From IMG/VR virus record IMGVR_UViG_3300027749_002876, positions 1-64,000 of that record: a stretch of DNA of 64,000 nt. One strand, written 5' to 3'. How positions within the stretch are numbered: position 1 is the first letter of the stretch; each line of letters opens with the position of its first letter. Below, one piece after another: positions 6,748 to 63,732 of the stretch. A model generated the notes under the pieces. The model worked only from the letters and a program-made list of their open reading frames with translations. It was not told the DNA's origin and searched no databases. A program made the position numbers and the translations under genes.

Positions 6748-6764
6748 GTATTGATAAATACTTG

Positions 6765-8807
6765 ATGAACTTAAAAGAGCTTGATTCCTTCAAAATATCT
6801 GACGCCGTCACTTTCCATGACAAGCTTAACCCTGCGTTGTGGGCAGGAAATAAATTGCGTCCTGAAGTTAAAAATCAACTAGAAGAAATAGCAAAAGACT
6901 TCCTAGAAGAAATGGGTATCAATGATTTAGATGTTAGAGATATTACTATCTCTGGGTCTAACGCCGCATACAGTTATACAAAACACAGTGACTTGGATTT
7001 ACATCTCTTAGTCAATATAAATGATTTACCTAATAATGATATATACCGTGAATTCTTTGACGCAAAGAAATCATTATACAACGATAACCATGATATAACT
7101 ATTCATGGGGTTCCCGTAGAGTTATATATACAAGATGCCGCACAACCATCAGTGTCGTTAGGAGAATACAGTTTACAAAATGATAAGTGGTTGCGTATTC
7201 CTACAAAGCGTAGAGCTAACTTTGACCAATCAGCTACAAGATTGAAGTATGAAAAATTACTTGATATTGTAGAAAGAGCATTAGACTCAAAGAACTTAAC
7301 TAAAATTCAAAAAGTATTAAAGAAGATTAAGCAATATCGTCAAGCCGGGTTAGATAAAGGTGGCGAGTTTGGTCCTGAGAATTTAGCATATAAAGCATTG
7401 CGTAGTCAGGGGTATATTACAAAATTACACGATTTAAAAAACAAGTTGCATAGTGAGGTATTAACCATTGAAACTATGTATCAAAACATTGATGAAACCT
7501 TTGACCAACCTTATAAACTTAAATGGGAAAAAAGTGATTACGGTGACGTTGATGCCTATGCTAAAATGGATGATGGTAATTATCTAAGTATTATGTTCAA
7601 CAAAGGATATAATCAAGATAAGGAAGAAGCATGGAGTGTTGAGTTCTACAGAAACAACAGCCAAGAAGTTACCGGTGAGGGTGATGCACAACGTGTATTT
7701 GCTACTGTATTAAGTGCTATTCAAACATTCATTAAAAAATACAAGCCCAACAAAGTAATCTTTTCAGCTAGTAAAGAAGTTGAAGATGGACAAAACTCAG
7801 AAAGTAGAGCAAGACTATATGATAGTTTAGTTCAGCGTTATGCTAGAGCATGGGGATTTAGAGCATTTCGTGCTGATACTGGTAATAAAGTTATATACGA
7901 ATTAAGTAGAAAGCAACCGGTAGATGAAGATATCAGCCGTAGAGGATTCTTAAAAGGCATGGGCGCGGCAGCGGTAACAGGTAGTGCTAAGGCTGGTCAA
8001 TATCAATCTTCTACTGAAATAAGTCCAGAGCAGATGCAACAAATTTGGAAGCCAAGAAAAGGTGAGTTAGAAACTAGATGCTATGCTATATTAAAATCAT
8101 TTGCTAATAGTATAGCCGAATCGCATCCTGATTGGGTTAAAGTAATTCAAAAAATAAAAGTAAACACTACTTTAGGTGATAAAGTATTTCGTCAAGGAAA
8201 TGCCGCAAATTCTAGAGTATCATCTAGGGTAGTAAATGGTAAACCGATAGGTGTACAAGCCGGTCAAATTGGTATCGAAACAACTGTATTTTGGGATGCT
8301 CCTAATGATACGCTTGCTTTTATTTTAGGTCATGAGTGTGGACATATAATTATGAATCATGGGTTTTCTTTGGCATCTGATGCTAGAAATAATGAACAAG
8401 AAGCAGATATTATTGGAGCCTCTCTTGCTAAAAAAATAGGTTATGACAGGGCTAATTTCTTTAATTTTTTATTCAATGCTAAAGCTGAACAATTAAAAAA
8501 TGGATCACCCAATGATCCTCATTTAGAACCAGTTGATAGAGTAAAGTTTTTGAAAAAGAATGCTGATTTTGAATTATCACATAACACTATACAATATATT
8601 GATTCACTTGCTCAACAACTAAAGCAAGGCTTAGCAGAAGCAAGTGGCTATATCCCTAGTGAAAAAGAAAAAAACGATCCACGTTTTAAGACAGCATTAA
8701 CAGTAGATGTAGGACCATATAGCATCAAAAAGAACGCAAAAGCATTTAGCTGGCTTACATCAAGGGCCGGCATTCCACCAACAGCAAGCCCAAATGGTAA
8801 GGTATGA
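6765..8807 (+). CDS. modular polyprotein: Pol-beta-type nucleotidyltransferase + unknown domain + internal Tat signal and M48-like HExxH peptidase + short tail module
   Basis: GSN...SDLDLH...ELY; SRRGFLK at 7935-7955; HECGH at 8331-8345, EQEAD; start moved to the ATG 4 nt after TAAATA. Confidence 0.75.
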   Translation: MNLKELDSFKISDAVTFHDKLNPALWAGNKLRPEVKNQLEEIAKDFLEEMGINDLDVRDITISGSNAAYSYTKHSDLDLHLLVNINDLPNNDIYREFFDAKKSLYNDNHDITIHGVPVELYIQDAAQPSVSLGEYSLQNDKWLRIPTKRRANFDQSATRLKYEKLLDIVERALDSKNLTKIQKVLKKIKQYRQAGLDKGGEFGPENLAYKALRSQGYITKLHDLKNKLHSEVLTIETMYQNIDETFDQPYKLKWEKSDYGDVDAYAKMDDGNYLSIMFNKGYNQDKEEAWSVEFYRNNSQEVTGEGDAQRVFATVLSAIQTFIKKYKPNKVIFSASKEVEDGQNSESRARLYDSLVQRYARAWGFRAFRADTGNKVIYELSRKQPVDEDISRRGFLKGMGAAAVTGSAKAGQYQSSTEISPEQMQQIWKPRKGELETRCYAILKSFANSIAESHPDWVKVIQKIKVNTTLGDKVFRQGNAANSRVSSRVVNGKPIGVQAGQIGIETTVFWDAPNDTLAFILGHECGHIIMNHGFSLASDARNNEQEADIIGASLAKKIGYDRANFFNFLFNAKAEQLKNGSPNDPHLEPVDRVKFLKKNADFELSHNTIQYIDSLAQQLKQGLAEASGYIPSEKEKNDPRFKTALTVDVGPYSIKKNAKAFSWLTSRAGIPPTASPNGKV

Positions 8808-10006
8808 ACGATACTATTTGTAAATATGTATTCAATAGTATCACCATATCAAACAGCGGAACAGTAGACCCTTGTTGTGCACCAAATGGCCCGCATACTA
8901 AAGTATACCATGATAAAATAAAAAATCCTTTAGTTATACATGATGACTTTAATGAGGTATTGAACAACACCCAAATAGTTAATCTTAGAAAATCAATGGT
9001 TGCCGGAGAAAAAAATTCACTATGCGATACATGTTGGCAGAGTGAAAGAATTAATGGTGAGAGTGAGAGAACTTTAGGAAATACAAATTTACGAAATTCT
9101 GATGTATATAACAAAATAATTGATTTTTCAAATATATTTCATATTAACTTATTTTTAGGAAATAAATGTAATTTAGCATGTAGAATGTGTAGTCCTTGGT
9201 GCAGTTCATTAATAGCAAAACAAACTGACATTATTTACCAACGACCACCTACACCAATTATTCAATTTAATGATGATACTCAACAAAGAATCATTGAATT
9301 TATAGACAATAGTGAAAACTTAGAAAAAATTCATATGTATGGTGGTGAACCATTAATAAATGATTTCTATGATTTAATTTGCTCACATTTAATAGCTAAT
9401 GGAAGAGCCTCAAAAATCACATTGGATCTTTCAACTAATCTGCAAGTTGATTTAGAAAGAAAAAATGAATTACATCGTCACTTTAAGAATGTACACATTG
9501 CAGTAAGTGTAGACGGTGAGGGGGATACATATGAGTACATCAGATGGCCCGGTAATTGGAATAAAATACAAAATAACTTAAAAATATTAAGTAATACTAG
9601 GAACGATTTCCATGTCTCATCAGTAGTACAAAATTTAAATATTGATAATCTGTCAAATTTGATGGTATATTTAAGCACCATTGAAAATTTTAAATATCAA
9701 AATAGTACATACCGCAAAGTAACTAGTCACACCAATATAAATGATATTAAAATTATACCAACATGGGTTATAGAGCGTGAAATAGATCGTTTAAAAGCAT
9801 TAAATCAAAACATGAATTATACTATACATGCTTTAGTTAAGATGCTAGAAGCCGAAGTTGAACCATCACGTAACTTAGCATACGAAGAAGTTGCTACTTT
9901 CTTCAAACAACAGAAAGATTGGGATTCTCTTAGAAATCAAAATCTTTTTAAAACAAAGCCTCATTTTTTAGAGTTGGCCAAGCAATTTAACATCGAACCC
10001 TGGTAA
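8804..10006 (+). CDS. radical SAM protein with N-terminal SPASM/twitch-like Cys cluster
   Basis: CNLACRMC, GGEP, N-terminal C...CC...CxxC. Confidence 0.85.
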   Translation: MNDTICKYVFNSITISNSGTVDPCCAPNGPHTKVYHDKIKNPLVIHDDFNEVLNNTQIVNLRKSMVAGEKNSLCDTCWQSERINGESERTLGNTNLRNSDVYNKIIDFSNIFHINLFLGNKCNLACRMCSPWCSSLIAKQTDIIYQRPPTPIIQFNDDTQQRIIEFIDNSENLEKIHMYGGEPLINDFYDLICSHLIANGRASKITLDLSTNLQVDLERKNELHRHFKNVHIAVSVDGEGDTYEYIRWPGNWNKIQNNLKILSNTRNDFHVSSVVQNLNIDNLSNLMVYLSTIENFKYQNSTYRKVTSHTNINDIKIIPTWVIEREIDRLKALNQNMNYTIHALVKMLEAEVEPSRNLAYEEVATFFKQQKDWDSLRNQNLFKTKPHFLELAKQFNIEPW

Positions 10007-15967: not shown

Positions 15968-15998
15968 AGATAAATATAGTATAACAGGAGAAAAAGTT

Positions 15999-16214
15999 AT
16001 GATTACAAAATTAGGCAAAACTGGAAAAACAAATCACGTGTTCACATCGGAAAAAGAATTTACGTTTTTAGAAGATTGGATACTCCAAACTAAAGGAAAA
16101 GATTTCCATGCTAGTTGGAAATTGCTTGAGCCTACTGACATAGAAGCAAGTACTGTATATGAAGAATGGAAAACCGTTAACGGTATTACTCATATTATGA
16201 CAGAAGACGAGTGA
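15999..16214 (+). CDS. hypothetical protein
   Basis: AGGAG SD and TAAATA upstream. Confidence 0.75.
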   Translation: MITKLGKTGKTNHVFTSEKEFTFLEDWILQTKGKDFHASWKLLEPTDIEASTVYEEWKTVNGITHIMTEDE

Positions 16215-16802: not shown

Positions 16803-16829
16803 TACTGATAGTTGTATAAATATTTTGCT

Positions 16830-17777
16830 ATGCTAAGTTATACTTTATCTAAAGATACCACAATCATTCAAGTTAACATTAAATTACTAGATACTAATTT
16901 TGCAAATAAGTGGAAAGATTATTTAACTAGAACTATTAAGCGATTACCTAATCTTGCTTGGAAGCCCGGGTATAATCCTATAGTTAATTATGTACCAATA
17001 AATCCATTAAACACTTTTGAAAAGTTAAAAGAATCATTTGTGTTATTACAAAAACATTATGGAACTGATTATTCATTTGAAATTAATGAACTAGATAACT
17101 TAATTCAGAATCCTAAGGAATTAACACAATCACACTTAAATTTGTGGAACCGTCACTTCACTACAAATGCTAGTGACTTTGTTACAAATATAGAAACAAA
17201 TCATTTAATACCCCATACTGACACGCCGGATCATATTATCTTTGCAACCATACATATGTTAAATCAGTGTACTCACAATTTAGAATCTTTTATATCTTTT
17301 ACACGTAGGGATAGTGTACGCATTGCGCCCCTGAAAAATAAAACATTTTATAGCATCCGATCGGCAGATGCTATAAATTTAAACGACAGCGCATCATTAT
17401 GGGGTAATGGTATGATTGAGGATCCTGAGGAAGATTTTACATTTAACAATGAATATCGTCACACTGTTTGGATGGCAGATGATATTGAAGGCAAGGATCA
17501 CTTCAAATGTTGGTATGACGAAGATGACGCATTAAATGACCATGTACATGGTAATATGTTCATGTCTCCAAATATAATGATTGATCCAGATATGATCTAC
17601 GCCACTATAATGGATGATCCAAAATTTAAGCAATTCGTACTTGATTCTAAAAAACCAATTAATAGATATCCAATTGGAAATATAGTTGATGTTGACACTA
17701 TAAATTGGAATGTTTTTAAAAAAGGTAAACTAATCTCTATCGTCTTAGATGGTGAAACATTATGGGAATCATCATAA
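16830..17777 (+). CDS. hypothetical protein (AT-rich)
   Basis: ATG 7 nt after TATAAATA (16815-22); start refined from 16812. Confidence 0.7.
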   Translation: MLSYTLSKDTTIIQVNIKLLDTNFANKWKDYLTRTIKRLPNLAWKPGYNPIVNYVPINPLNTFEKLKESFVLLQKHYGTDYSFEINELDNLIQNPKELTQSHLNLWNRHFTTNASDFVTNIETNHLIPHTDTPDHIIFATIHMLNQCTHNLESFISFTRRDSVRIAPLKNKTFYSIRSADAINLNDSASLWGNGMIEDPEEDFTFNNEYRHTVWMADDIEGKDHFKCWYDEDDALNDHVHGNMFMSPNIMIDPDMIYATIMDDPKFKQFVLDSKKPINRYPIGNIVDVDTINWNVFKKGKLISIVLDGETLWESS

Positions 17778-17830
17778 AAGGTTTCCTTATTAACTAGGTA
17801 ATTAAAATTGTTTGTGTTATAATAACATAA

Positions 17831-18424
17831 ATGATTAAATTAACAGTTCCATTACCCAAACAATTAACAGTAGCCTTTAGTGGTGGTGTAGACAGTTGTG
17901 CCGCAGTTGATTTTCTAAGTAGAAAGCATGATGTTATTTGTGCTTTCTTTCATCATGATACAGAGAATAGCGAACGGGCATATGAGTTTGTTGCTAACTT
18001 TTGCAATGATAGAAAACTATCATTAATCTTTGCTCGTATTAGTGAACCAGTTGTTCCAAAAGGTATCAGTCAAGAAGAACATTGGCGCGATCAAAGATAT
18101 ACATTTCTACAAACATTAGGTCCCGTCATTACAGCACATCACTTAGATGATTGTGTTGAAACATACATCCATTCGGCACTTAATGGCACACCCAAAGTTA
18201 TCCCTATGATTCGCAACAATGTGTTGCGACCATTCTTAACAACACGCAAGAGTGAATTTATCTCTTGGTGTCAACGACACAATGTACCCTGGATTGAAGA
18301 TTCAAGTAATCAAGATTCTAAATACATGCGTAACTACATTCGCAACGAATTAATGCCACATGCATTGCGAGTTAACCCAGGTTTGCATACTTTGGTAAAA
18401 AAAGTTGTTGAAAAGCAACGATAA
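17831..18424 (+). CDS. tilS: tRNA(Ile)-lysidine synthetase-like PP-loop ATPase, catalytic domain only
   Basis: AFSGGVDS, TAHHLDDCVET, RPFL, DSSN...YMRNYIR. Confidence 0.85.
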   Translation: MIKLTVPLPKQLTVAFSGGVDSCAAVDFLSRKHDVICAFFHHDTENSERAYEFVANFCNDRKLSLIFARISEPVVPKGISQEEHWRDQRYTFLQTLGPVITAHHLDDCVETYIHSALNGTPKVIPMIRNNVLRPFLTTRKSEFISWCQRHNVPWIEDSSNQDSKYMRNYIRNELMPHALRVNPGLHTLVKKVVEKQR

Positions 18425-21436: not shown

Positions 21437-21499
21437 ATTGATGTTGCATTTCGCAATAAAATCCACTATAATACACATATAAACAACCTAAATAATTCT

Positions 21500-22066
21500 A
21501 TGATATCTCAAATTGAATTTGCTAGAAACAATAACTTTCCTTTAAAATTATTTGTTAGGGAAAATGTGTTAAGTGTAGAGATGTGTAATAATATTAAAGA
21601 GTTTACAAAAACTGAACATTCTGGATGGCATCGTTCTATTAATCGTACACCAAAGCATTGGGATATTGAATGTCACACTTGTAGAATCCCACTAGAGTGG
21701 GACAATGGTGAATTGCATAAATTACTATCACCAGTCTGGGAAGAAGCAATTGAATATTACGGTATGAATGTAACTCATGTAGAACATTATGAGGTAAAAA
21801 AATACAGTGAAGGTGATTACGTTACAGAACACGTTGACCAGTTTTACGGTAAAGCAGGAATTGAACGAAAATTAACGATGCTTGTTCAATTAAGTGACGA
21901 GTCTGATTATGTTGATGGTGATTTACATGTGATCAGATATCCAAGAAGCAAAACTATAGGATCATTGGTAATTTTACCTGCATTCTATTTACATGAAGTA
22001 AAAACAATAACATCAGGAGAACGCTGGTCACTGAATTGTTGGGCATGGGGCCCATATTGGAAATGA
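21500..22066 (+). CDS. 2OG-Fe(II) oxygenase (PKHD/prolyl-hydroxylase-like)
   Basis: HVD, RKLT, HEV, GERWSL. Confidence 0.85.
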   Translation: MISQIEFARNNNFPLKLFVRENVLSVEMCNNIKEFTKTEHSGWHRSINRTPKHWDIECHTCRIPLEWDNGELHKLLSPVWEEAIEYYGMNVTHVEHYEVKKYSEGDYVTEHVDQFYGKAGIERKLTMLVQLSDESDYVDGDLHVIRYPRSKTIGSLVILPAFYLHEVKTITSGERWSLNCWAWGPYWK

Positions 22067-41440: not shown

Positions 41441-41466
41441 TCTAAATAGTAGTATATAATAAACAC

Positions 41467-42468
41467 ATGACAACATACGCACTTATCGATACTGCAAATA
41501 CTTTCTTCCGTGCTAGACACGTGGCATCACGTTCTAGTACATTGGAAGAAAAGATAGGCATGGCCCTTCACTTAACACTTGCGTCAGTCAATCAAGCTGT
41601 TCGCAAATACGGAATCGATCATGTCGTATTCTGTCTCGAAGGCCGCTCGTTCAGAAAGGATCTCTATGCTCCATATAAAAAGAATCGTGTAGTAGATGCT
41701 ATGTCTATTACTGAGGAAGAAGCCGAAGAGTCAAAAATGTTTTGGGAAACGTATGAAAAATTTACAACTTTCATTAAAGAGCGGACTAACGTGAGTGTCC
41801 TTCGTCACGAACGTGCTGAAGCAGATGACCTCATCGCCCGCTTCATCGCATTGCATCCAGCAGATCGCCACGTAATTTTATCAACGGATGGCGACTACGC
41901 ACAGTTAATTTCTGAAACCGTTTCGCAGTACAACGGCGTGACTAATGAGCTAATCACATTAAAGGGCTACTTGAAAGAAAATGGTAAGCCTGTCATTGAT
42001 AAGAAAACTAAAGAGCCTAAACTACTAGAAGATCCCGAGTACGGATTATTCAAAAAAATTATCAGAGGTGATTCAGGGGACAACGTGTTCAGTGCTTTTC
42101 CGGGCTGTCGTGAGAAAGGTACTAAGAATAAAGTTGGCATTCGTGAAGCATTTGAAGATAGAAACAAACAGGGCTTCAATTACAACAATTTTATGTTGCA
42201 ACGTTACACAGACCATGAGGGTGTTGAAGTACGAGTTAAAGATGCGTTTGAGAGAAATCGTACACTCATCGACTTGACTGCACAACCCCAAGAAATAAAA
42301 GATGCTGTGGATCAACGGATTCGTGAAAGTGTCCGTATTGAAACTATTCCTCAAGTGGGCCTACATTTTCTAAAATTTTGTGGCAAGTATGAATTGACAA
42401 AAATTTCAGAACAAGCAGAAATTTATAGCAAATGGTTAAATACGCCTTATAAAGGAAATTTATTATGA
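41467..42468 (+). CDS. rnh: RNase H / 5'-3' exonuclease (T4 rnh, FEN-like)
   Basis: LIDTAN, YKKNR, EADDLI, STDGD, GDSGDNV; ATG 6 nt after TTGAAA-17-TATAAT. Confidence 0.9.
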   Translation: MTTYALIDTANTFFRARHVASRSSTLEEKIGMALHLTLASVNQAVRKYGIDHVVFCLEGRSFRKDLYAPYKKNRVVDAMSITEEEAEESKMFWETYEKFTTFIKERTNVSVLRHERAEADDLIARFIALHPADRHVILSTDGDYAQLISETVSQYNGVTNELITLKGYLKENGKPVIDKKTKEPKLLEDPEYGLFKKIIRGDSGDNVFSAFPGCREKGTKNKVGIREAFEDRNKQGFNYNNFMLQRYTDHEGVEVRVKDAFERNRTLIDLTAQPQEIKDAVDQRIRESVRIETIPQVGLHFLKFCGKYELTKISEQAEIYSKWLNTPYKGNLL

Positions 42469-45607: not shown

Positions 45608-46064
45608 ATCGCTAATTGCAAAACCTGTAGTTAAAAATCAATTTTGGATTGTAACTAATGGAGAAGAAAAAGTAGGTAATGTCCTTGCTGATGGCTCGGG
45701 CTTTGAACTCAAATTAAATGGTAATAAAACTCATTATAAGAATACGAAGGCTATTGAGCGTATTACTAATATTCGTTTTGAGAATGTAACTAAACTCAAG
45801 ACAGTCGAGAAAGACTTACCCTTTAGTGAATATCCTACTACTCCTAAGGTATTCAATAGTATACTAGATGTAAGACGTAAACTACACTTGTTTACAAAAA
45901 CAATAAAAAGTAAGTGTTATTATGCCGCAGGATGGTATGCAGTTACGCAAGGTAGTGAGAGTAAAGCAATTTTCTGCCCTAAATATATCTTTATCCAAAG
46001 ATATGAGTACACGGGTCCATATAAAACTAAAGATGAGGCAGAAAATGTGCTAAATAGCATATGA
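45600..46064 (+). CDS. hypothetical protein
   Basis: AAGGA SD, 154 aa. Confidence 0.75.
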   Translation: MDKSLIAKPVVKNQFWIVTNGEEKVGNVLADGSGFELKLNGNKTHYKNTKAIERITNIRFENVTKLKTVEKDLPFSEYPTTPKVFNSILDVRRKLHLFTKTIKSKCYYAAGWYAVTQGSESKAIFCPKYIFIQRYEYTGPYKTKDEAENVLNSI

Positions 46065-47121: not shown

Positions 47122-47612
47122 TAGCCCCAAAGACCTTCGTTACGCATACGTCGGATAGTATATAGGTATGTACTACATATAGCATAAGCTTTGACTTTTA
47201 CCATAGTTAATAGACTACGATCATTTATCTCCGGTAAAAACATAACACTATTTGTGTTGATAGGTACAGTACCCGGAGTAATCAATTTACCATTGCTAGC
47301 AGTAGCATACGGCGGGGGCGGCGTAGATGCATCAAAATGAAAATAGTTTGGATATAATTTAGAAGGTTGTGTCGCAATCCAAGTTTGCATATCAGTGTTT
47401 TTAGCATTGATCCAAAATCTATTACCTTGTATGTACTTTTCAGTTACTTCAATTATAGGTTGATTGTTGCCCACATATAATTTATTATCTATTCTCCAAA
47501 CATCAATTAAACAGGAAAAACCCTTTTGTTGGGCTTTGCTTATTTGCGGCGGAGTGTTGGCATCCTCATAGTTTGAACCATCATAGATTCCTTGATAAGA
47601 TATATAGAACAT
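47118..47612 (-). CDS. degenerate glycerophosphodiester-phosphodiesterase-like protein
   Basis: ISYQG...NTP...GFSCLIDVW...WINAKN follows the GDPD-like pattern with His/Glu replaced. Confidence 0.55.
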   Translation of the reverse strand: MFYISYQGIYDGSNYEDANTPPQISKAQQKGFSCLIDVWRIDNKLYVGNNQPIIEVTEKYIQGNRFWINAKNTDMQTWIATQPSKLYPNYFHFDASTPPPPYATASNGKLITPGTVPINTNSVMFLPEINDRSLLTMVKVKAYAICSTYLYTIRRMRNEGLWGY

Positions 47613-47702
47613 ACTATATTTATGTCAACGGAATTAATAGCTGCCGCGTTATATATATGTAGACGCTAAAATCTACTTCATTAACCATAAAGGAAACTTA
47701 AA

Positions 47703-47966: not shown

Positions 47967-48178
47967 TACAATAAGACTTACATTAATCAGATTTCACGGA
48001 ATCAATCCAATTGATGTTCTGATTGATGATGAGGACATATTAGTAAATTCTAGACGCATTGTTGGGAAGGTTGATAACCCTCCCGATGATGTTGAAGAGG
48101 AACTAAGTGATTATATAGAGTCTAGACTCAACCTTGCTAGGAATTTAGCAATGATGAAGTACAGACATAAATATCAGG

Positions 48179-48934
48179 ATGAAGCTGTATTTTAAATTTA
48201 ATATTCTACCTGAATTCATAATACATTCACGTGTGAATTCTGTAATAGAAGGTTATGGTTTGGATACGGTTTCTGACTGTCTAGACAAAACTCACTTTAA
48301 AAATTACCCATATAAAGTTGAACACAAATTCAATGACAGGGGATTTAGGGACGATGTTTGGCCTGTATCTAACTTAGATGAATGTATATGGTGTGTGGGA
48401 GATAGTTTCACAGTAGGCATAGGATCTCCTAGAGAACATACATGGACTTATCTATTACAAGAAAAAACAAAAATAAGAACAATTAATATTAGTATGGATG
48501 GTGCTAGCAACACATGGATTGCTCGAAAAGCATCAAGCGTTATTGAGTCTATCGTACCAAAAAATTTAATTATCCAATGGTCTTATATACATCGTAGAGA
48601 ACTTTTTGATACTCGATTGTCAGATGAAAACCGAAGACTGTGGTATGATGAAGATTTATTTGACGGTGAAGACAACATTAATTTAACCCTAGATAATATA
48701 GCCCAAGTTGATACTCTTGCAAAAACTCGAGGAGTCAATGTTATTCATACATTTGTACCAGATTGTGTTCCTAAGTGGGATAGAGAATTATTTTATGACA
48801 AAGTGAGACAATTTAAGATAGGTATCGTTGATTATGATGTGTTAGATAAAGCAAGAGACGGGCATCATTACGATATAAAAACGGCAGACTTGTTGACCGA
48901 TAACATTGTCAACTCGGGTCTATTAAATATATAA
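48179..48934 (+). CDS. SGNH/GDSL-hydrolase-like protein
   Basis: GDSFT, GASN, QWS, DGHH. Confidence 0.65.
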   Translation: MKLYFKFNILPEFIIHSRVNSVIEGYGLDTVSDCLDKTHFKNYPYKVEHKFNDRGFRDDVWPVSNLDECIWCVGDSFTVGIGSPREHTWTYLLQEKTKIRTINISMDGASNTWIARKASSVIESIVPKNLIIQWSYIHRRELFDTRLSDENRRLWYDEDLFDGEDNINLTLDNIAQVDTLAKTRGVNVIHTFVPDCVPKWDRELFYDKVRQFKIGIVDYDVLDKARDGHHYDIKTADLLTDNIVNSGLLNI

Positions 48935-49759: not shown

Positions 49760-49787
49760 CACACATACACTTTTTTAAGGAAATAAA

Positions 49788-50093: not shown

Positions 50094-50111
50094 ACGGATA
50101 TAAATATCTAC

Positions 50112-51218
50112 ATGAATGTATTAATATTAACTCCCGATCGTGTAGGTAGCACTCTACTACAACGCCTGATAACTGTTTACATGAATGCACATGAATATGA
50201 CAAACCAGTTATTAATTTGCATGAACTCACTAATGGTATAGATTTATATTACAGTGATGTATATAACAGAGAAGTATTAGGTAAGCCTAGAAATGGCAAA
50301 GAATGGGGATACTACCAATCATTGGAAGAAGTAGTAAACAACTTATCAAAAGCTGACCACTATAAAACAGCTAGACTTGCATTATACCATTTAAATAACA
50401 GAAATGATAGTACCGAAGATAAAACTCAATTTTATAATTATATTAATGATAATTTTTATATAATATCCGCACGTAGGAATAATCTATTTGAACACGCTAT
50501 CAGCTGGGGCATTGTTACTGCTAGTAAAAAATTAAATGTGTATACTCATGCTGAAAAAATAGATACCTTCTATAACATATACAAAAATGGCATAACTATT
50601 AATGAGACAACATTGAAAAATTATTTGTATAGTTACAAAGAATATCTTAAATGGTCTGATACTCATTTTAGAGTAGCAAGTTATTTTGACTATGAAAAAG
50701 ACTTAAAAGATATTGAAAAATATATATTGAATTTAGATATATTCCCTAATAAAGAAAAGAAAACATGGAATGATATATTCAATATTGAGTGGAAAGACTG
50801 GAATAAATGCCATAAACTAATTAGTGATGTTGGTTCAATGGATCCCAAGTTATTAGAGTATGCCGGTCCTAAAACTCCTAGCACAGAGTTAGTATTAGAT
50901 AAACTTAAAAACAATTTAAGTTTATTAGATCAAGATTATTTATTAGAACATAGTAAAAAATATATTGCCGCACACAAAGGTATAGGTCAATTAGTACGCA
51001 ATGGTACATTAGTTACCGGCATACCAATTAAATTACAAACTATGGCTGAAAAGAAAAAAGTAATCAAGAACTTTGATGAATGTATTGAAGTATATAATAA
51101 ATGGGTTGATGAAAATAATTTGGGTATTAAATATACCAATGACGAGTTAAAGCAAATTGCCAACGAAGAAGTAAAAAATTGGTACAACGAAGTGCCAAAA
51201 AACTTATTACTAGAATAA
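50112..51218 (+). CDS. sulfotransferase-like P-loop protein
   Basis: TPDRVGSTLL (PAPS-binding-like), RRNNLFEHAISW. Confidence 0.55.
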   Translation: MNVLILTPDRVGSTLLQRLITVYMNAHEYDKPVINLHELTNGIDLYYSDVYNREVLGKPRNGKEWGYYQSLEEVVNNLSKADHYKTARLALYHLNNRNDSTEDKTQFYNYINDNFYIISARRNNLFEHAISWGIVTASKKLNVYTHAEKIDTFYNIYKNGITINETTLKNYLYSYKEYLKWSDTHFRVASYFDYEKDLKDIEKYILNLDIFPNKEKKTWNDIFNIEWKDWNKCHKLISDVGSMDPKLLEYAGPKTPSTELVLDKLKNNLSLLDQDYLLEHSKKYIAAHKGIGQLVRNGTLVTGIPIKLQTMAEKKKVIKNFDECIEVYNKWVDENNLGIKYTNDELKQIANEEVKNWYNEVPKNLLLE

Positions 51219-51476: not shown

Positions 51477-51591
51477 TACTCAAGTATTACATTTTTAGCC
51501 CCTCTTTTGGGGCGATCCCACACCCAAAATTTGACAATAAATGGACATTGTGCTATAATAGAATCTTAAACAGTAAAGAAAAGGAAACGAA

Positions 51592-51864
51592 ATGTCAGCA
51601 CTTACAGAATACACATTGGAAATCTACAAAATAGACAAGCGTACCAAAGAGGGTAAGCGACTGGTTGCAAAACAAGATTTTGCTCCTAGTACTAAAGACT
51701 ACATTTCTTGTGTAGCCGAAGGTAAGCGTAAGTTGGGTTTAGTTGTTGAAGTGTTTGAGACCTTTGTTACCCGCAAAAACTTGATGGGTGGCAAGTCATT
51801 CCAAGAACGCTATGACACTCCTTACTATTGCTCACCCTCAAGCGAATCGTACTGGTCAATGTAA
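51592..51864 (+). CDS. early hypothetical protein
   Basis: AAGGA SD, own promoter. Confidence 0.8.
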   Translation: MSALTEYTLEIYKIDKRTKEGKRLVAKQDFAPSTKDYISCVAEGKRKLGLVVEVFETFVTRKNLMGGKSFQERYDTPYYCSPSSESYWSM

Positions 51865-51926
51865 AGGTTGACAATAAATGGATTTGGGTGTATAATACTT
51901 GTATTGACTTAACTAAAGGACTAAAA

Positions 51927-52193
51927 ATGACTAAGAAAATCTCTATCAAAGTATTCGGTGATCCCGGACACGCTTGGGCACGTTTCCCCAAAGCTAAGTT
52001 GGTTAGTCTTGGTATCGCTGATAAGATCACTCCTTACAGTTACCAAAATGGTACTAATGCTTTCCTTGAGGAAGACTGTGATTTGTCAACACTGATGGCA
52101 GTTCTTAAGGCCAAAGGTTATGAAGTAAAATTTAATGAGAGTTTTACCAACAAACAAAGCAAAATCCGCGGTTATTGCTCATACAAAATTTGA
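51927..52193 (+). CDS. early hypothetical protein (DPGHAW...LEEDCD)
   Basis: AAGGA SD before ATG 51927. Confidence 0.8.
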   Translation: MTKKISIKVFGDPGHAWARFPKAKLVSLGIADKITPYSYQNGTNAFLEEDCDLSTLMAVLKAKGYEVKFNESFTNKQSKIRGYCSYKI

Positions 52194-52224
52194 CAATAAA
52201 TGGGCATTGTGCTATAATTCATTT

Positions 52225-52449
52225 ATGAAATCAAAAATCTTTATTAATCAACGTGACAATGACAAGTATTTCAAACAGAAAATGCCTACATGGCGCAATG
52301 GTTTCTGTGAAATAGTCCGTAATGTCACGATTGAAAAGGACCCGCACGACATTTACCTAGACGGTGAGTGGGGTTACATTACGGTCTATGGCCGTAAGAT
52401 TTATGTCACACGGGCCGGCACTGAATTTGCATTTGAAATTCGTGGCTAA
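52225..52449 (+). CDS. early hypothetical protein, probably leaderless
   Basis: ATG 6 nt after TATAAT. Confidence 0.7.
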   Translation: MKSKIFINQRDNDKYFKQKMPTWRNGFCEIVRNVTIEKDPHDIYLDGEWGYITVYGRKIYVTRAGTEFAFEIRG

Positions 52450-52516
52450 AAGGTTGACAATAAATGGTTTTGGGTGTATAATAGAATCTTAAACAGTTAA
52501 ACAACAGGAGTTAAAA

Positions 52517-55402: not shown

Positions 55403-56745
55403 GTGCAAGTTGGATTAATAAATTAAATGAATCAGATAGCCGTCTTCATAAGGAAGATATTATCAAACAAGCATTAGAGGCAAGTGTCCTCGGTAGCATT
55501 AATAGTCAAGTGTTTTTAGGCTTTCTCAAAGCCTGTTACAATCCCTACGTAACATTTGGTGTCAAACAGATTCCTGACACAGTTGGTATTGTTGATGCAG
55601 AAAATCCCTGGACTGAATTCAATGAATTAATGGTGCAACTTAGTCACCGTAGGTTGACAGGTCATGCCGCACGTGATGCTATTCAAAGTACGGCTGAACG
55701 ATTTGATAGTGATGAATGGAATACATTCTTAGCACCTATATTGCGTAGGGACTTACGTGCAGGTATCAGTGATAAAACAATCAACAAAATTTGTAAGGGC
55801 ACTGACTACGAGATTCCAATCTTTGGTTGCCAACTAGCAACTAACAGTGAAGGTCGTCCTGAGATGAAGGGTACGAAACGTCTTGAGCCTAAGTTGGATG
55901 GTGTTCGTGCATTGTTCACTGTTATCCCCAGTGACTTTGATATCACTGTAGTTTGCTACAGTCGCAACGGTAAAGTGTTTGAGAACTTTGGTCACATCGA
56001 AAATCAGATTCACGACAATTGGACCAAGATGGTTCGTGCGTGTAATGGTGTAGACCAAGGTCGTAGTCTCGTTGATGGTTTTGTACTTGACGGTGAAGTG
56101 ATTGGACATAGTTTCCAAGAACTTATGCGACAAGCACGCCGAAAAACTGACGCACAGGCAGAGGATAGTGTATTAAACATCTTTGACATTATCCCTCTCG
56201 CAGACTTCCGTCGAGGTCATTGGAACGCACAATTGCGTAAGCGTATTGCTTTGCTTGATAGTATGCGCCCAGTTGTTGATACAATGCCCAATGTTGAACT
56301 ACTGCCACACATCATGGTTGACTTAGATACAGCCGCAGGTAAGGATCAACTTGAGCGTTATGCTAAGGACAACGTTAATGCAGGATTTGAAGGCATTATG
56401 ATTAAAGAATTAGAAGCCCCATATCAGTGCAAGCGTAGCACTGATTGGATGAAGTGGAAGCCCACTATTACTGTAGACTTAGAGGTTGTAGGTGTTGAAG
56501 AAGGTACTGGACGTAATCTTGGACGCTTGGGAGCACTTGTTTGTGCAGGTGTAGATGATGGGAAAGAAATTTCAGTCAATGTTGGTAGTGGCTTTAGTGA
56601 CGGTGATAGAGATGATTACTGGAATAATCGCAATCTGGTCATTGGCAGAACTTGTGAGGTACTGTGTGATGTGATTACACAAAACCAAGATGGTACATAC
56701 AGTTTGCGCTTTCCACGCTTTGTTAGATTCCGTGATGACAAATAA
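55399..56745 (+). CDS. lig: ATP-dependent DNA ligase
   Basis: EPKLDGVR, LDGEV, EGIMIK, WMKWK, GSGF, SLRFPRF. Confidence 0.96.
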   Translation: MSASWINKLNESDSRLHKEDIIKQALEASVLGSINSQVFLGFLKACYNPYVTFGVKQIPDTVGIVDAENPWTEFNELMVQLSHRRLTGHAARDAIQSTAERFDSDEWNTFLAPILRRDLRAGISDKTINKICKGTDYEIPIFGCQLATNSEGRPEMKGTKRLEPKLDGVRALFTVIPSDFDITVVCYSRNGKVFENFGHIENQIHDNWTKMVRACNGVDQGRSLVDGFVLDGEVIGHSFQELMRQARRKTDAQAEDSVLNIFDIIPLADFRRGHWNAQLRKRIALLDSMRPVVDTMPNVELLPHIMVDLDTAAGKDQLERYAKDNVNAGFEGIMIKELEAPYQCKRSTDWMKWKPTITVDLEVVGVEEGTGRNLGRLGALVCAGVDDGKEISVNVGSGFSDGDRDDYWNNRNLVIGRTCEVLCDVITQNQDGTYSLRFPRFVRFRDDK

Positions 56746-56753
56746 ATACATGT

Positions 56754-57305
56754 ATGATAATAGAACCTGTATGCCATAAATTGTTTCAAGTAACTGATAT
56801 ATTACCTGAATCAGCATGTGAAGAAATTAAAAATCTTAATTGGTTAAATTTACCGGCTGAAAGTCCTCCCTTACAAGAACTGATGATACGTAAAAGAATC
56901 AAAGATGAAGAAATTCCAACTTTAGTTAAAATAAATCAATTACTTGAAAAGCATGGAAAGGAAATAGGCAAACTGCTAAATCTTAAGTTTAATCACATAC
57001 GCACACTTTGGTGGTTAGACTTACCCGGATTTACATCGGGTATTCATATTGATAGTACAGGTTGCCCTGCATTGCAAGCATATTGGATCGGTCCTAGTAG
57101 TGAGTATGGTACACATTTTTATACTACCGGAGATTACATTCCCAAACCTGCTAATTTAATTAAAGGTTTTGACTTTATTCCAAACACCGGCTATTTAAAT
57201 GATTTAGCAGGGTCTGATTCTGAAAAAATATATCACGGGATGTTAAATCCTGTACCCGAAAATACTTTCAGAATATCTTCCTATACTCAGTTTTGGACTG
57301 AGTAA
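56754..57305 (+). CDS. probable 2OG-Fe(II) oxygenase-like protein
   Basis: HID...GT.FY...HGM...R. Confidence 0.6.
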   Translation: MIIEPVCHKLFQVTDILPESACEEIKNLNWLNLPAESPPLQELMIRKRIKDEEIPTLVKINQLLEKHGKEIGKLLNLKFNHIRTLWWLDLPGFTSGIHIDSTGCPALQAYWIGPSSEYGTHFYTTGDYIPKPANLIKGFDFIPNTGYLNDLAGSDSEKIYHGMLNPVPENTFRISSYTQFWTE

Positions 57306-59109: not shown

Positions 59110-59147
59110 TATGTAGATTAATAGGTTATAATTCAACTAAATATTAG

Positions 59148-60809
59148 ATGCGCTTAAAATTTCTATCCTTCTCAAATCTCACTCTATTAGTAGCACTCTG
59201 TCTTAGTTCAGTGGCTGCCTGGTATAGTATCATCGGCTTAACCGCTATCTTTGCAGGTGCGGTTATCCCTGTTATCATTATGGGTACTATCCTCGAGATA
59301 GGAAAGATTACCACAACTGTTTGGCTACGCAAGTACTGGGGTCGTTGTGGGTTCTTGCTTAAACTATACCTAGTACCTGCTGTGATTGCACTAGCATTAT
59401 TAACTTCTATGGGCATCTTTGGTTTCTTGTCAAAAGCACACATGGAACAAGGCATGATATCAGGTGATGTGCAAAGTAAAATTGCAATATATGATGAAAA
59501 AATCAAAACCGAAAAAGAGAATATTGAAGCAAACCGTAAGGCGCTTAAACAGATGGATGAGGGAGTGGATCAAGTATTGGGACGCTCAACAACAGAAACG
59601 GGTGCTGAAAAAGCTGTGGCTATGCGAAAAACCCAGCAGAAAGAACGTGCTAGACTTCAAAATGAAATACTACAGTCGCAAAAGTCTATCGCGGGACTTA
59701 GTGATGCACGTGCGCCTATTGCCGCCGAGGTACGTAAAGTTGAAGCAGAAGTTGGGCCAATTAAGTATATCGCGGCGTTAATCTACGGAGACAATGCTGA
59801 CCAAAATATGTTGGAAGCGGCAGTACGTTGGGTTATTATACTATTGGTTATTGTATTTGATCCTCTTGCTATTGCATTAGTGTTAGCAGCCAACGCAAGT
59901 AAAGAATGGGATGAGGAGGGTGACAGCCCTCTAGGGGATAAAACACCATTGACCCCCGCTGTCACAGAACCTGCATATGAGCCTGATGATGGTCCTATTA
60001 ACGAAGAAGCATTAGAGGCACTACGTGAACGTGCAAAAGAAGAACTACCGAGCGGTAAAATAATTACTAAATCAGAGTTATTCCCGTCAGACCCTACTAT
60101 AAATTGTTACAAATGTGGTACTGAATTAATAAATGCTCCTGGTATAGGTCTTTTCTGTCCTAATAAAAAATGTGAGGTGTTAGATAGCGTAGACAATTCT
60201 AATATAACATGGGAATATATCTCACCTGCATCAGTGAACGTTGAACCAGAAAAGTCTATATTAGAACAACATCCATACTTAACTAAAGGTTTTGACCATT
60301 TTGAAAATTTAAAGCCAATGGTATATAAACCAGAAGCAGAAGCCGAACCAACCGCAGATACTGAAACTAAAATTGATGACGTAACTAGCATGGAAGTAAA
60401 ACAAGATTTACCCTTTACTGAATTACCGGGTGGATATGTATCATATGAGGGCAAACATATACAGCGAGATGCTTTATTCAGTCAGCATCCAGAATTTTTA
60501 AAATTATCGGCTGATGCAAGCCAACCAGTTAATAGTAGTTTTGGAACTAAGTTCCCTGACATTGCTAATAAAGGTGATGTCTTTACCAGAGTAGATGTAT
60601 TGCCTAATAAAGTATTTAAATATGATAGCAGAAATTGGATTGAGATTAGTAAAGAAACATCCAACACATACCTTTACAATACCAAATACCTTGATTACCT
60701 TGTGGAAATGATTGGTAAAGGTGAATATGATCCTGAATTACTATCAGACAATGAACGTGCTCAAATTGAAGACCATATTAAACTCAACAAACTTAACCAA
60801 AGTCATTGA
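59148..60809 (+). CDS. multi-pass membrane protein with coiled coil and acidic C-terminus
   Basis: three N-terminal TM segments, heptad region, further TM (VIVFDPLA). Confidence 0.8.
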   Translation: MRLKFLSFSNLTLLVALCLSSVAAWYSIIGLTAIFAGAVIPVIIMGTILEIGKITTTVWLRKYWGRCGFLLKLYLVPAVIALALLTSMGIFGFLSKAHMEQGMISGDVQSKIAIYDEKIKTEKENIEANRKALKQMDEGVDQVLGRSTTETGAEKAVAMRKTQQKERARLQNEILQSQKSIAGLSDARAPIAAEVRKVEAEVGPIKYIAALIYGDNADQNMLEAAVRWVIILLVIVFDPLAIALVLAANASKEWDEEGDSPLGDKTPLTPAVTEPAYEPDDGPINEEALEALRERAKEELPSGKIITKSELFPSDPTINCYKCGTELINAPGIGLFCPNKKCEVLDSVDNSNITWEYISPASVNVEPEKSILEQHPYLTKGFDHFENLKPMVYKPEAEAEPTADTETKIDDVTSMEVKQDLPFTELPGGYVSYEGKHIQRDALFSQHPEFLKLSADASQPVNSSFGTKFPDIANKGDVFTRVDVLPNKVFKYDSRNWIEISKETSNTYLYNTKYLDYLVEMIGKGEYDPELLSDNERAQIEDHIKLNKLNQSH

Positions 60810-60865
60810 CAACTAGTTACATTTAGTGTATAATAACTCTATCTGTAACTACAAACGGAGTATAT

Positions 60866-62505: not shown

Positions 62506-62529
62506 ATAATAAAACAGATAAGTAAAACT

Positions 62530-63732
62530 ATGTCAACAGAAACAAAACTAAACCATTGCACATTTTGTGGTGCCCATAAAGAAAAAGTTAAAAAACTCAT
62601 TGTCAGTGAAGAGGTGGCAATTTGCAGTGATTGCGTAGACCTATGCAATAAATTGATGATGGATGATAGCCATGAAAAAATAGAACCAACGGAACACAAT
62701 GTATCCTACGATCCAGAGTCTATCAAAGAATTTTTAGACCAACACATCATAGGACAAGATAGTGCTAAGGGTGTGTTAAGTGTAGCAATTGCTAACCACT
62801 ATAAACGAATCAACAAGCCACCAAAAGATTTAGAAATCTCTAAGGGTAATGTTTTGTTAGTAGGACCCACTGGATCAGGTAAAACATTGCTTGCTAAAAC
62901 AGTAGCAAAATACTTAGAAGTCCCCTTTATTATAGCAGATGCTACAAGTATTACTGAAGCAGGTTATGTAGGTGATGATGTTGAATCAATGATTAGTATG
63001 CTAGTCAATGCCGCCGGCGGCGATCCTAGACTAGCAGAACGCGGTATTGTGTTTGTTGATGAGATTGACAAGATTGCTCGCAGAGGTGAGTCAGCAAGTG
63101 TTACACGTGATGTATCCGGTGAGGGTGTGCAACAAGCATTACTTAAATTAGTTGAAGGTACTATATGTCGTATTCCAGCAAGTGGTGGACGCAAACACCC
63201 CGGTGGTGATATGCTTGAGATTAATACAAAAGACATTCTGTTTATTGCAGGTGGTGCGTTTGTAGGATTAAAAGAAATTATCAACAACCGCGAGAATGGA
63301 ACAAGTATTGGCTTTGGTGCAGAGATTAAAGATAATCGCAAAGAGTCAGAATTGACAAATGTGTCGCCTGATGACTTAGTTAAATTTGGAATGATTCCTG
63401 AGTTTATTGGTCGTTTTACTACTACAGTAAGTGTGAGTGATTTAAATAAAGAAGAATTGATTAAGGTTCTTAAGGAAGTTAAGAACAACTATATCGACCA
63501 ATACAAATATTTGCTCAGTTTAGACAACATTGCAATAGACTTTAATGAAGATGCATTGGATCAACTAGCAGAGAATTGCTTAAAATTAAAGACAGGTGCT
63601 CGTGGATTACATACTGAAATTGAACGCACATTAATGCCACATATGTTTAACACTAAAAAGTACCGTGAAAACAATGTTACCGAGATAAATATAGACAGAG
63701 ATTTAGTTTTGGAGCCAAAATCATTAGCATGA
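62530..63732 (+). CDS. clpX: ATP-dependent Clp protease ATP-binding subunit ClpX
   Basis: CTFC...CSDC Zn domain, GPTGSGKT, EAGYVG, RDVSGEGVQQ, RKH, IGF loop, GARGL. Confidence 0.97.
   Translation: MSTETKLNHCTFCGAHKEKVKKLIVSEEVAICSDCVDLCNKLMMDDSHEKIEPTEHNVSYDPESIKEFLDQHIIGQDSAKGVLSVAIANHYKRINKPPKDLEISKGNVLLVGPTGSGKTLLAKTVAKYLEVPFIIADATSITEAGYVGDDVESMISMLVNAAGGDPRLAERGIVFVDEIDKIARRGESASVTRDVSGEGVQQALLKLVEGTICRIPASGGRKHPGGDMLEINTKDILFIAGGAFVGLKEIINNRENGTSIGFGAEIKDNRKESELTNVSPDDLVKFGMIPEFIGRFTTTVSVSDLNKEELIKVLKEVKNNYIDQYKYLLSLDNIAIDFNEDALDQLAENCLKLKTGARGLHTEIERTLMPHMFNTKKYRENNVTEINIDRDLVLEPKSLA

What the first reader, a model, noticed from the sequence alone, without database searches (positions are those of the whole stretch)
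6755..62532. Widespread leaderless transcripts: ATG sits at the predicted +1 of late and early promoters
Seen: TAAATA followed 4-5 nt later by the start ATG, with no room for an SD, at 6755->6765, 21489->21500, 46051->46061, 47622->47612 (minus), 48168->48179, 50101->50112, 56743->56754 and 59138->59148. Variants are TAAGTA 62519->clpX 62530 and a 7-nt gap at 16830. Sigma70 -10 boxes lie 6-7 nt before the ATG of dnaJ (15), tilS (17831), rnh (41467) and 52225. Known: the T4 late promoter is TATAAATA with initiation a few nt downstream. Inference: a substantial leaderless regulon, notable in a phage that encodes its own bS21.
Basis: partly seen in the sequence, partly recalled or inferred. Interest (0 to 1): 0.62.

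Follow-up and report, generated by a model that had tools for sequence, protein, structure and literature searches.

The report
Promoters fused directly to start codons
In this giant freshwater phage and its uncultured relatives, about one gene in seven has its ATG exactly where a late-type (TAAATA) or ordinary bacterial (TTGACA/TATAAT) promoter should start the RNA, so these messages probably have no leader and no ribosome-binding site; this is a statistically solid and conserved pattern, but no start site has been mapped.

Summary
All listed sites are in the sequence. In the whole 524,565-bp record, TAAATA lies 4 or 5 nt before an ORF-opening ATG 25 and 30 times. Composition-matched hexamers give about 3 per spacing, and shuffling the upstream regions gives 3.5±1.8 against 45 observed.

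TATAAT peaks 6 nt before ATG (18 times), often with TTGACA 17 bp upstream. The same (G)A-TAAATA-(C/T) element also lies 16-23 nt upstream of other genes, with AGGA/GGAG in between. Spacing is therefore bimodal, either no leader or an SD leader, with a trough at 8-12 nt.

The record encodes a gp55-family late sigma factor. TAAATA-fused genes include terminase, a virion protein and the baseplate hub. TATAAT-fused genes include ThyA, exonucleases and DnaJ.

Motif and spacing are conserved while the flanks diverge:
- TerL: 77 of 80 related contigs.
- Orthologues in a complete 348.7-kb relative: 31 of 37.

The three cultured relatives whose matches were fully listed show no such peak.

Best reading: early and late promoters placed so that +1 is the A of AUG, giving leaderless mRNAs (confidence 0.7). 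No start site is mapped, because the only RNA data are contigs. A link to bS21 is not supported. The "524-kb" record looks like a 347.5-kb genome joined to 173 kb of a related phage.

The parts
3..17 (+). TATAAT (3-8), 6 nt, then the ATG of dnaJ (15-824). An in-frame TGA lies immediately upstream. The contig start cuts off the -35 region.
   Evidence: The J domain covers residues 3-61. The paralogue at 191 kb has TTGACT-N17-TATACT-N7-ATG.
6755..6767 (+). Late-type promoter core TAAATA, 4 nt, then the ATG of a 680-aa protein (phrog_36119, M48-like).
   Evidence: The G001 orthologue (72% identity) keeps ATAAATA-N4-ATG with different flanks.
16815..16832 (+). Full TATAAATA, 7 nt, then ATG 16830. 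This predicts a 1-2 nt leader or a shifted start.
   Evidence: The paralogue at 513686(-) has TAAATA at gap 5.
17790..17833 (+). TATAAT (17818-17823), 7 nt, then the ATG of a PP-loop (TilS-like) ATPase. The -35 is weak.
   Evidence: The G001 and paralogue orthologues keep TATAAT at gap 6.
21489..21502 (+). TAAATA, 5 nt, then the ATG of a 2OG-Fe(II) oxygenase.
41432..41469 (+). TTGAAA-N17-TATAAT-N6-ATG of a 5'-3' exonuclease / RNase H-like gene.
   Evidence: The paralogue at 489168(-) has TTGACA-N17-TATAAT-N6-ATG, and G001 keeps TATAAT at gap 6.
46051..46063 (+). TAAATA, 4 nt, then the ATG of a 69-aa ORF. The motif lies inside the 3' end of the upstream gene (45600-46064).
   Evidence: Conserved in the paralogue (486846) and in G001.
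47610..47622 (-). TAAATA, 4 nt, then the ATG of a 164-aa ORF (47118-47612).
   Evidence: Orthologues at 53-83% identity keep TAAATA at gap 4-6.
48168..48181 (+). TAAATA, 5 nt, then the ATG of a 251-aa ORF.
   Evidence: An RNA-library contig (47724-48208, 0 mismatches) runs across this site, so read-through RNA or carried-over DNA exists.
50101..50114 (+). TAAATA, 5 nt, then the ATG of a 368-aa ORF. A hairpin lies just upstream.
52190..52227 (+). Perfect TTGACA-N17-TATAAT, 6 nt, then the ATG of a 74-aa ORF.
   Evidence: The second copy keeps TTGACA-N17-TATAAT-N6-ATG.
56743..56756 (+). TAAATA, 5 nt, then the ATG of a 183-aa ORF. The TAA is the stop codon of the DNA ligase gene.
59138..59150 (+). 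CTAAATA, 4 nt, then the ATG of a 553-aa ORF.
   Evidence: Four orthologues at 62-71% protein identity keep an identical motif-to-ATG stretch, and sequence further upstream is unalignable.
62518..62532 (+). Variant ATAAGTA, 5 nt, then the ATG of clpX.
   Evidence: The zinc finger covers residues 9-44. ATAAGTA-N5-ATG is kept in four relatives at 77-82% identity.
63685..63944 (+). ATAAATA inside the clpX 3' end, a 37-nt leader, then the bS21 gene (63729-63944). This is a leadered late-promoter example.
15971..16001 (+). Example of the leadered class: TAAATA, 22 nt containing AGGAG, then ATG 15999. Other examples are at 822, 3825, 5601, 37878 and 42437.

Best explanation
Two promoter classes are positioned so that transcription starts on the A of the start codon, giving mRNAs with a 5'-terminal AUG and no Shine-Dalgarno leader.

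Early/middle class. Host sigma70 holoenzyme reads TTGACA-N17-TATAAT. The ATG lies 6 (5-7) nt after the -10 hexamer, which is the canonical +1.

Late class. Host core RNA polymerase carrying the phage's gp55-family sigma reads (G)A-TAAATA-(C/T), a T4-type late promoter without a -35. The ATG lies 4-6 nt after it. In T4 the motif occupies -13 to -6, so a 5-nt gap puts the A at +1.

Such messages would be bound through the 5' AUG by 70S ribosomes or 30S-IF2-fMet-tRNA. Other genes behind the same two promoter types use a short SD-containing leader instead.

Shown: the motifs, their spacing, the statistics, the gp55 homologue, gene functions, start-codon correctness and conservation. Inferred: the start position, and that the messages are translated as leaderless.
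For: - Sharp, ATG-specific peaks: TAAATA at gaps 4/5 = 25/30, TATAAT at gap 6 = 18, against about 3 for controls. Shuffling gives 3.5±1.8 against 45 observed.
- -35 elements: TATAAT sites with leaderless geometry score at least 4/6 to TTGACA in 17 of 29 cases, against 163 of 749 other TATAAT sites (Fisher p = 3e-5). The distance from strong promoters (-35 score at least 5 of 6, exact TATAAT) to the next ATG is bimodal: 6-7 nt (10 sites) or 26-35 nt.
- The same extended TAAATA motif lies 16-23 nt upstream of 58 other genes with AGGA/GGAG in between. Only 1-4 sites fall at each gap from 8 to 12. None of the 60 fused sites has an SD-like 4-mer.
- ATAAATA is 55% intergenic in a genome that is 92.5% coding.
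- A gp55-family sigma lies at 341198-342103 (phrog_12791 E = 4e-73, phrog_234 E = 1e-21). It sits behind a sigma70-like promoter with an SD.
- Gene functions split as expected. Late-fused: terminase large subunit, virion protein, baseplate hub. Sigma70-fused: ThyA, exonuclease, FEN/RNase H, DnaJ, PP-loop ATPase.
- The starts are right. Domains begin at residues 1-12 (DnaJ 3-61, ClpX zinc finger 9-44, ThyA 2-299). In 42 of 60 sites the ATG is the first start codon after an in-frame stop. Only 6 of 60 have an alternative SD-preceded start downstream.
- Conservation despite diverged flanks: TerL in 77 of 80 contigs across 64 distinct upstream contexts; 31 of 37 late and 14 of 25 exact sigma70 orthologue pairs with G001, with several more as one-mismatch -10 hexamers; orthologues of 59148 and clpX.
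- Some orthologues have switched to an SD leader, including the baseplate hub. This is what two interchangeable start architectures predict.
- Related Rak2-like phages were already predicted to use ATAAATA late promoters and a gp55-like sigma (PMC5259590). The T4 motif position is given as -13 to -6 in PMC1524935.
Against: - No transcription start site is mapped. The runs that hold this DNA are assembled contigs, which cannot show 5' ends. One RNA-library contig crosses the 48168 site, so longer RNA or contaminating DNA also exists.
- With canonical T4 spacing, +1 at the 25 gap-4 sites would fall on the T of ATG, so initiation must be one nucleotide closer there. Gap 6-7 sites would carry 1-2 nt leaders.
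- The host is unknown, so its ability to translate leaderless mRNA is unknown.
- No gp45-type clamp was detected, though that search's control also found nothing. gp33 was not sought.
- The absence of a GTG/TTG peak has little power, because only about 9% of SD-led starts are non-ATG.
- Counts in the 524-kb record are inflated by paralogous duplication. The per-genome figure is about 50.
Confidence: 0.7

Rival explanations
1. The motifs are promoters, but initiation falls 1-3 nt to either side of the A. The messages then have ultra-short leaders, or the fused ATG is lost at some sites and a downstream start is used.
For: The gap is not fixed: 4, 5 and 6 for TAAATA, 5-7 for TATAAT. Canonical T4 spacing fits only gap 5. 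The site at 16815 has a 7-nt gap.
Against: The base before the ATG is mostly T, giving the pyrimidine(-1)/purine(+1) pattern preferred for initiation. N-terminal domains begin within the first residues, and only 6 of 60 sites have an alternative SD-preceded start. Orthologues mostly keep the same gap.
Confidence: 0.13
2. The ATG-proximal AU-rich hexamers act on RNA as SD-independent translation signals inside longer read-through transcripts. They might be read by S1 or by ribosomes carrying the phage bS21 or IF1, rather than marking transcription starts.
For: Some sites lie inside operons or overlap the upstream gene (46051, 56743). An RNA-library contig bridges the 48168 site. The phage encodes bS21 and IF1.
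Against: - The TATAAT sites carry TTGACA at 17 bp, which has no meaning on RNA.
- The same TAAATA element occurs 16-23 nt upstream of ATGs that have their own SD.
- A gp55-family sigma is present.
- Several sites directly follow terminator hairpins or tRNA genes.
- Phosso carries bS21 and IF1 but has no peak at this spacing.
Confidence: 0.08
3. The hexamer marks an endoribonuclease cleavage site that trims longer transcripts to 5'-AUG messages. This would be processing-generated leaderless mRNA, as with MazF.
For: AU-rich single-stranded sequence just 5' of the AUG is compatible with RNase E-type sites (general knowledge, not tested).
Against: It does not explain the -35 boxes, the second spacing mode with SD leaders, the gp55 homologue, or the split into late and early genes.
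Confidence: 0.03
4. The pattern is a composition or annotation artefact. It would come from chance hexamers in AT-rich intergenic DNA, wrongly chosen start codons, or counts inflated by the duplicated record.
For: The genome is 63% A+T. The record holds two diverged copies of about 155 kb, so sites are not all independent.
Against: The enrichment is ten-fold over 14 composition-matched hexamers and over shuffles. The peak is present separately in both parts of the record and in G001. It is conserved across 64 different upstream contexts. Domain evidence supports the starts.
Confidence: 0.02

Closest known systems
T4-type late promoters (TATAAATA, gp55-dependent) and the ATAAATA late motif predicted in Rak2-like jumbo phages (CBB, GAP32)
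   Same: A TAAATA core with no -35 element. A gp55-family sigma is encoded. The element lies upstream of packaging and virion genes. The DNA polymerase is 42-48% identical to those of Rak2-like phages and Phosso.
   Different: About 40% of gene-proximal TAAATA elements here abut the ATG at 4-6 nt instead of preceding an SD leader. RaK2, CBB and Phosso show no such concentration. No gp45-type clamp was found (inconclusive).
Thermus phage phiYS40 middle/late genes
   Same: A lytic phage in which most middle/late messages are reported to be leaderless (review PMC3594737).
   Different: phiYS40 has a Thermus host, in a lineage already rich in leaderless genes, with different promoters. It is reported to shift host IF2/IF3 levels. 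Here the promoters are of the gp55 and sigma70 types, only about 13-15% of genes are involved, and both early and late classes take part. Nothing has been shown experimentally.
-10 region adjacent to ORFs in Deinococcus-Thermus, and leaderless genes of Actinobacteria
   Same: A -10 element a few nucleotides upstream of the ATG, giving leaderless mRNA as a common mode of expression (PMC12340547; PMC4633059, listed).
   Different: Those are cellular genomes, mostly without a -35. Here a phage genome uses full -35/-10 promoters plus a second, phage-sigma promoter class.
Lambda cI transcript from PRM
   Same: A sigma70 promoter whose +1 is the A of the AUG; the classic phage leaderless mRNA (PMC10491246).
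   Different: That is a single regulatory gene of a temperate phage, not a regulon of about 50 genes.

Membership tests
T4-type (gp55-dependent) late promoter | A conserved TATAAATA-like -10 element with no -35 element | tested here: met
   Extended consensus (G)A-TAAATA-(C/T): A at -1 in 67-77% of sites, with no conserved positions further upstream. The first T of the T4 octamer is not conserved, as in other T4-like phages.
T4-type (gp55-dependent) late promoter | A phage-encoded gp55-family sigma factor | tested here: met
   341198-342103: phrog_12791 E = 4e-73, phrog_234 E = 1e-21. Present in all 8 relatives tested.
T4-type (gp55-dependent) late promoter | The gp45 sliding clamp and the gp33 co-activator | tested here: inconclusive
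   phrog_223 (gp45) gave no match, but it also matched none of the control genomes. gp33 was not searched. CBB likewise lacks detectable gp33 and gp45.
T4-type (gp55-dependent) late promoter | Precedes late (virion and packaging) genes | tested here: met
   Terminase large subunit, virion structural protein and baseplate hub. Other members are of unknown or non-structural function.
T4-type (gp55-dependent) late promoter | Transcription starts about 6 nt after the motif | not testable with these tools
   Only assembled contigs of the RNA libraries were available.
Sigma70 -35/-10 promoter | TTGACA, a 16-18 bp spacer, then TATAAT | tested here: met
   54 sites have TATAAT with a perfect TTGACA at 16-18 bp. 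Nine of them lie 5-7 nt before an ORF-opening ATG. There are five 12/12 matches in window 44-64 kb, all on the + strand.
Leaderless mRNA | The primary 5' end coincides with the A of the AUG | not testable with these tools
   No raw reads or 5'-end data. Inferred from promoter geometry only.
Leaderless mRNA | No room for, and no occurrence of, a Shine-Dalgarno sequence | tested here: met
   0 of 60 fused sites have an SD-like 4-mer at -15 to -4. The leadered class and most other genes do have one.
Leaderless mRNA | The start codon is AUG rather than GUG or UUG | tested here: inconclusive
   The peak exists for ATG only, with none for GTG, TTG or CTG in either genome. Only about 5 non-ATG sites would be expected anyway.
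Leaderless mRNA | The fused ATG is the true start codon | tested here: met
   N-terminal domains begin at residues 1-12. The ATG is the first start after an in-frame stop at 42 of 60 sites. Orthologue alignments begin at residue 1.

The most novel reading that the evidence does not exclude
A whole clade of uncultured freshwater Rak2-related jumbo phages has moved a large share of both early and late gene expression to leaderless initiation, and pairs this with its own initiation components: IF1 expressed early and bS21 expressed from a late promoter. Under this reading the phage sets up a private translation-initiation regime. Remodelled ribosomes would favour 5'-AUG and short-leader phage messages over host mRNAs, analogous to the IF2/IF3 shift reported for phiYS40.
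Probability: 0.1. Interest if true: 0.8.

Novelty: new variant of a known kind. Interest (0 to 1): 0.55.

Why it matters
Leaderless mRNAs and T4-type late promoters are each well known. A gp55-type late promoter fused to the start codon, used together with sigma70-fused starts for about 13-15% of a jumbo phage's genes and conserved across a large environmental clade, was not found in the searchable literature.

If start-site mapping confirms it, there are three consequences.
- It gives a simple sequence rule for annotating starts and temporal classes in these abundant lake phages.
- It shows that promoter-to-ATG distance is under bimodal selection: no leader, or a leader long enough for an SD.
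- It offers compact promoter-ATG cassettes for testing how phages exploit SD-independent initiation.

It also warns that gene callers relying on an SD will misplace these starts.

Tried and rejected
- RNA evidence. One search for sequencing runs found lake metatranscriptomes, but all are held as assembled contigs, which give no 5' ends, strand or level. Nothing is concluded from them, beyond noting that identical sequence is present in one RNA library.
- Megablast of 8 kb against GenBank phages found no match.
- Rfam on the whole window found nothing.
- A sigma70 region 2 domain, IF3 and S1 were sought in the record and not found.
- gp45 was not found, but that search was uninformative.
- Host inference from ClpX was ambiguous. 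The best cellular match is 59% (a Haliscomenobacter MAG), then 44-51% across many phyla. Canonical TTGACA/TATAAT promoters and real SD leaders argue against a Bacteroidota host, but the host stays unknown.
- bS21 link. Phosso has bS21 and IF1 and shows no TAAATA-ATG peak. CBB and RaK2 have neither gene and also show no peak. No correlation follows, so bS21 is not used as evidence.
- The gap listings for XaC1 and the Vibrio phage were cut off, so nothing is claimed for those two beyond their low totals.
- The original phiYS40 paper is not in the held library, so a review is cited instead.
- The bS21 lake phages of PMC9723584 are a different group: 31-34% GC, with bS21 next to the terminase gene. 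That paper does not discuss promoters.

Full report
**What the window is**

The window is the first 64 kb of a single 524,565-bp IMG/VR virus record with 36.7% G+C and the standard genetic code. Its family-B DNA polymerase is 42-48% identical to those of Sinorhizobium phage Phosso, Xanthomonas phage XaC1 and the Rak2-like jumbo phages RaK2 and CBB, and more distantly related to T4-like phages. Hundreds of close relatives, with TerL at 83-97% identity, occur in metagenome-derived viral contigs. The sequencing runs that hold this DNA are lake-water libraries.

**The observation**

I counted every TAAATA on both strands of the whole record against the distance to an ATG that opens an ORF of at least 60 aa.
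- There are 25 sites at gap 4 and 30 at gap 5, against 0-7 at gaps 0-3 and 6-12.
- The other 14 permutations of A4T2, and 16 single-base or related variants, give about 3 per gap. The only other peaks are frame-shifted readings of the same motif.
- Shuffling the 40 nt upstream of 881 first ATGs gives 3.5±1.8 sites, against 45 observed.
- TATAAT peaks at gap 6, with 18 sites against about 3.
- The peaks are specific to ATG.

**The elements behave as promoters**

The TATAAT sites with this geometry are enriched for a TTGACA-like hexamer at 16-18 bp: 17 of 29 against 163 of 749, p = 3e-5. The record holds 54 TATAAT sites with a perfect TTGACA at that spacing. For the stronger promoters (-35 score of at least 5 out of 6), the distance to the next ATG is bimodal, either 6-7 nt (10 sites) or 26-35 nt.

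TAAATA has an extended consensus, (G)A-TAAATA-(C/T). It also appears with that same consensus 16-23 nt upstream of 58 other genes, with AGGA or GGAG in between. Few sites fall at gaps 8-12, and none of the 60 fused sites has an SD-like 4-mer. ATAAATA is 55% intergenic in a genome that is 92.5% coding. Several sites follow terminator hairpins or tRNA genes.

The record encodes a gp55-family late sigma factor at 341198-342103 (phrog_12791, E = 4e-73). That gene lies behind a sigma70-like promoter and an SD. Related Rak2-like phages were already predicted to use ATAAATA late promoters and a gp55-like sigma (PMC5259590). In T4 the late motif occupies -13 to -6 (PMC1524935), so a 5-nt gap puts the A of ATG at +1. 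For sigma70, a 6-nt gap does the same.

**Gene content and start codons**

TAAATA-fused genes include the terminase large subunit, a virion structural protein and the baseplate hub. TATAAT-fused genes include thymidylate synthase, an exonuclease, a FEN/RNase H-like nuclease, DnaJ and a PP-loop ATPase.

The start codons are well supported:
- The J domain covers residues 3-61, the ClpX zinc finger 9-44 and ThyA 2-299.
- At 42 of 60 sites the ATG is the first start codon after an in-frame stop.
- Only 6 of 60 sites have an alternative SD-preceded start downstream.

**Conservation**

- In 77 of 80 related contigs, TerL keeps TAAATA 4-6 nt before its ATG, across 64 different upstream contexts.
- Orthologues of the gene at 59148 (62-71% protein identity) and of clpX (77-82%) keep the motif-to-ATG stretch. 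Neighbouring SD-led genes keep GGAG instead.
- Against G001, a 348.7-kb relative rated complete, 31 of 37 late pairs and 14 of 25 sigma70 pairs keep the exact motif. Several of the remaining sigma70 pairs carry one-mismatch -10 hexamers at the same position.
- A few orthologues have switched to an SD leader, including the baseplate hub.
- G001 shows the same genome-wide peaks.

RaK2, CBB and Phosso show no concentration at gaps 4-5, although all of them encode the gp55-like sigma. The fused architecture therefore looks specific to the freshwater clade.

**Mechanism and its limits**

The best-supported reading is that early sigma70 promoters and late gp55-type promoters are placed so that transcription begins on the A of AUG. 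This gives about 50 leaderless messages per genome, roughly 13-15% of genes. The remaining promoters of the same two types drive short SD leaders.

What is missing is any mapped 5' end. The RNA libraries are available only as contigs, and one of those contigs crosses the 48168 site. The gap-4 sites require initiation one nucleotide closer to the motif than in T4. The host is unknown.

**bS21**

The record has two bS21 genes (63729-63944 and about 472110 on the minus strand) and two IF1 genes, one of each per genome copy. bS21 sits behind ATAAATA and a conserved leader of about 37 nt, so it is probably a late gene.

Phosso has both bS21 and IF1 yet shows no fused-promoter peak. The Vibrio phage also has bS21, but its matches were not among those listed, so it tests nothing. 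No link between bS21 and leaderless starts is supported.

**Literature**

Leaderless messages are known for lambda cI, for phiYS40 middle/late genes (PMC3594737) and for Deinococcus-Thermus genes with a -10 element adjacent to the ORF (PMC12340547). No paper in the held library links gp55-type promoters to leaderless starts.

**The record itself**

The last 4,089 nt (520,477-524,565) repeat 172,924-177,012 at 99.6% identity. This implies a circular genome of about 347.5 kb. That stretch is colinear with the whole of G001.

The first 173 kb, which contain the window, are an inverted and diverged second copy. Protein identity is 50-98%, and the DNA polymerase is 90.5% identical. G001 has a single polymerase gene.

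The "524-kb" size is therefore probably a join of two related phages. This does not affect the finding, because each part shows the peaks on its own.

Noticed in passing
Whole record: 1-172,923 versus 172,924-524,565: The record looks like a circular genome of about 347.5 kb plus 173 kb of a related phage. The last 4,089 nt repeat 172,924-177,012 at 99.6% identity. The first 173 kb, which include the window, are an inverted, diverged copy (proteins 50-98% identical, two DNA polymerases at 90.5%). The complete relative G001 is 348.7 kb with one polymerase. A chimeric assembly is more likely than a true 524-kb megaphage.
   Followed up: partly
window 63685-63944; second copy about 471,880-472,153 (-): Each genome copy has a bS21 gene immediately after clpX. 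It lies behind an ATAAATA element inside the clpX 3' end and a conserved leader of about 37 nt, so bS21 is probably expressed late.
   Followed up: partly
G000:C1:89925-90134 (+) and 448299-448490 (-): Each copy has a phage-encoded IF1 homologue (PF01176, E = 1e-22). It is the last gene of a run of same-strand genes whose first gene (88293) has a sigma70-fused start. No IF3 or S1 was found.
   Followed up: partly
G000:C1: 218159, 219164, 269735, 270717, 271681, 276400, 277373, 287533, 357815-360800, 451969, 453154, 512154, 518181: A paralogue family of 16 proteins of about 320 aa, 60-74% identical to each other. At least eight members (218159, 219164, 277373, 287533, 360800, 451969, 453154, 518181) sit behind a TAAATA motif plus an SD leader. 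Function was not examined.
   Followed up: no
window 51531-52482 and 60806-60834 (+): Five perfect 12/12 TTGACA-N17-TATAAT promoters, all on the + strand. Four lie within 1 kb, in front of very small ORFs. This looks like an early host-takeover block; only one (52190) is fused to its ATG.
   Followed up: partly
G000:C1: about 116-122 kb (-) and 417-419 kb (+): Several small ORFs with fused TAAATA starts begin directly after sequences that look like tRNA 3' ends (the tRNAs were not scanned for), so tRNA genes and late promoter-ATG cassettes seem to alternate.
   Followed up: no
G000:C1:336289 (-), 82115 (-) and 447497 (-), against their G001 orthologues: Orthologous genes differ in start architecture: TAAATA-fused in one genome and a GGAG leader in the other. 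This shows evolutionary switching between the two modes.
   Followed up: partly
RaK2 record JQ513383.1 (W03): TAAATAATG, with the motif directly abutting the ATG, occurs 14 times among 70 matches in RaK2. This is a different and unexplained spacing preference.
   Followed up: no
window 47724-50041: One lake RNA-seq library (X2) holds contigs identical to the window copy (47724-48208, 48327-48918, 49844-50041). This exact phage was therefore present, and possibly transcribed, in that sample.
   Followed up: partly
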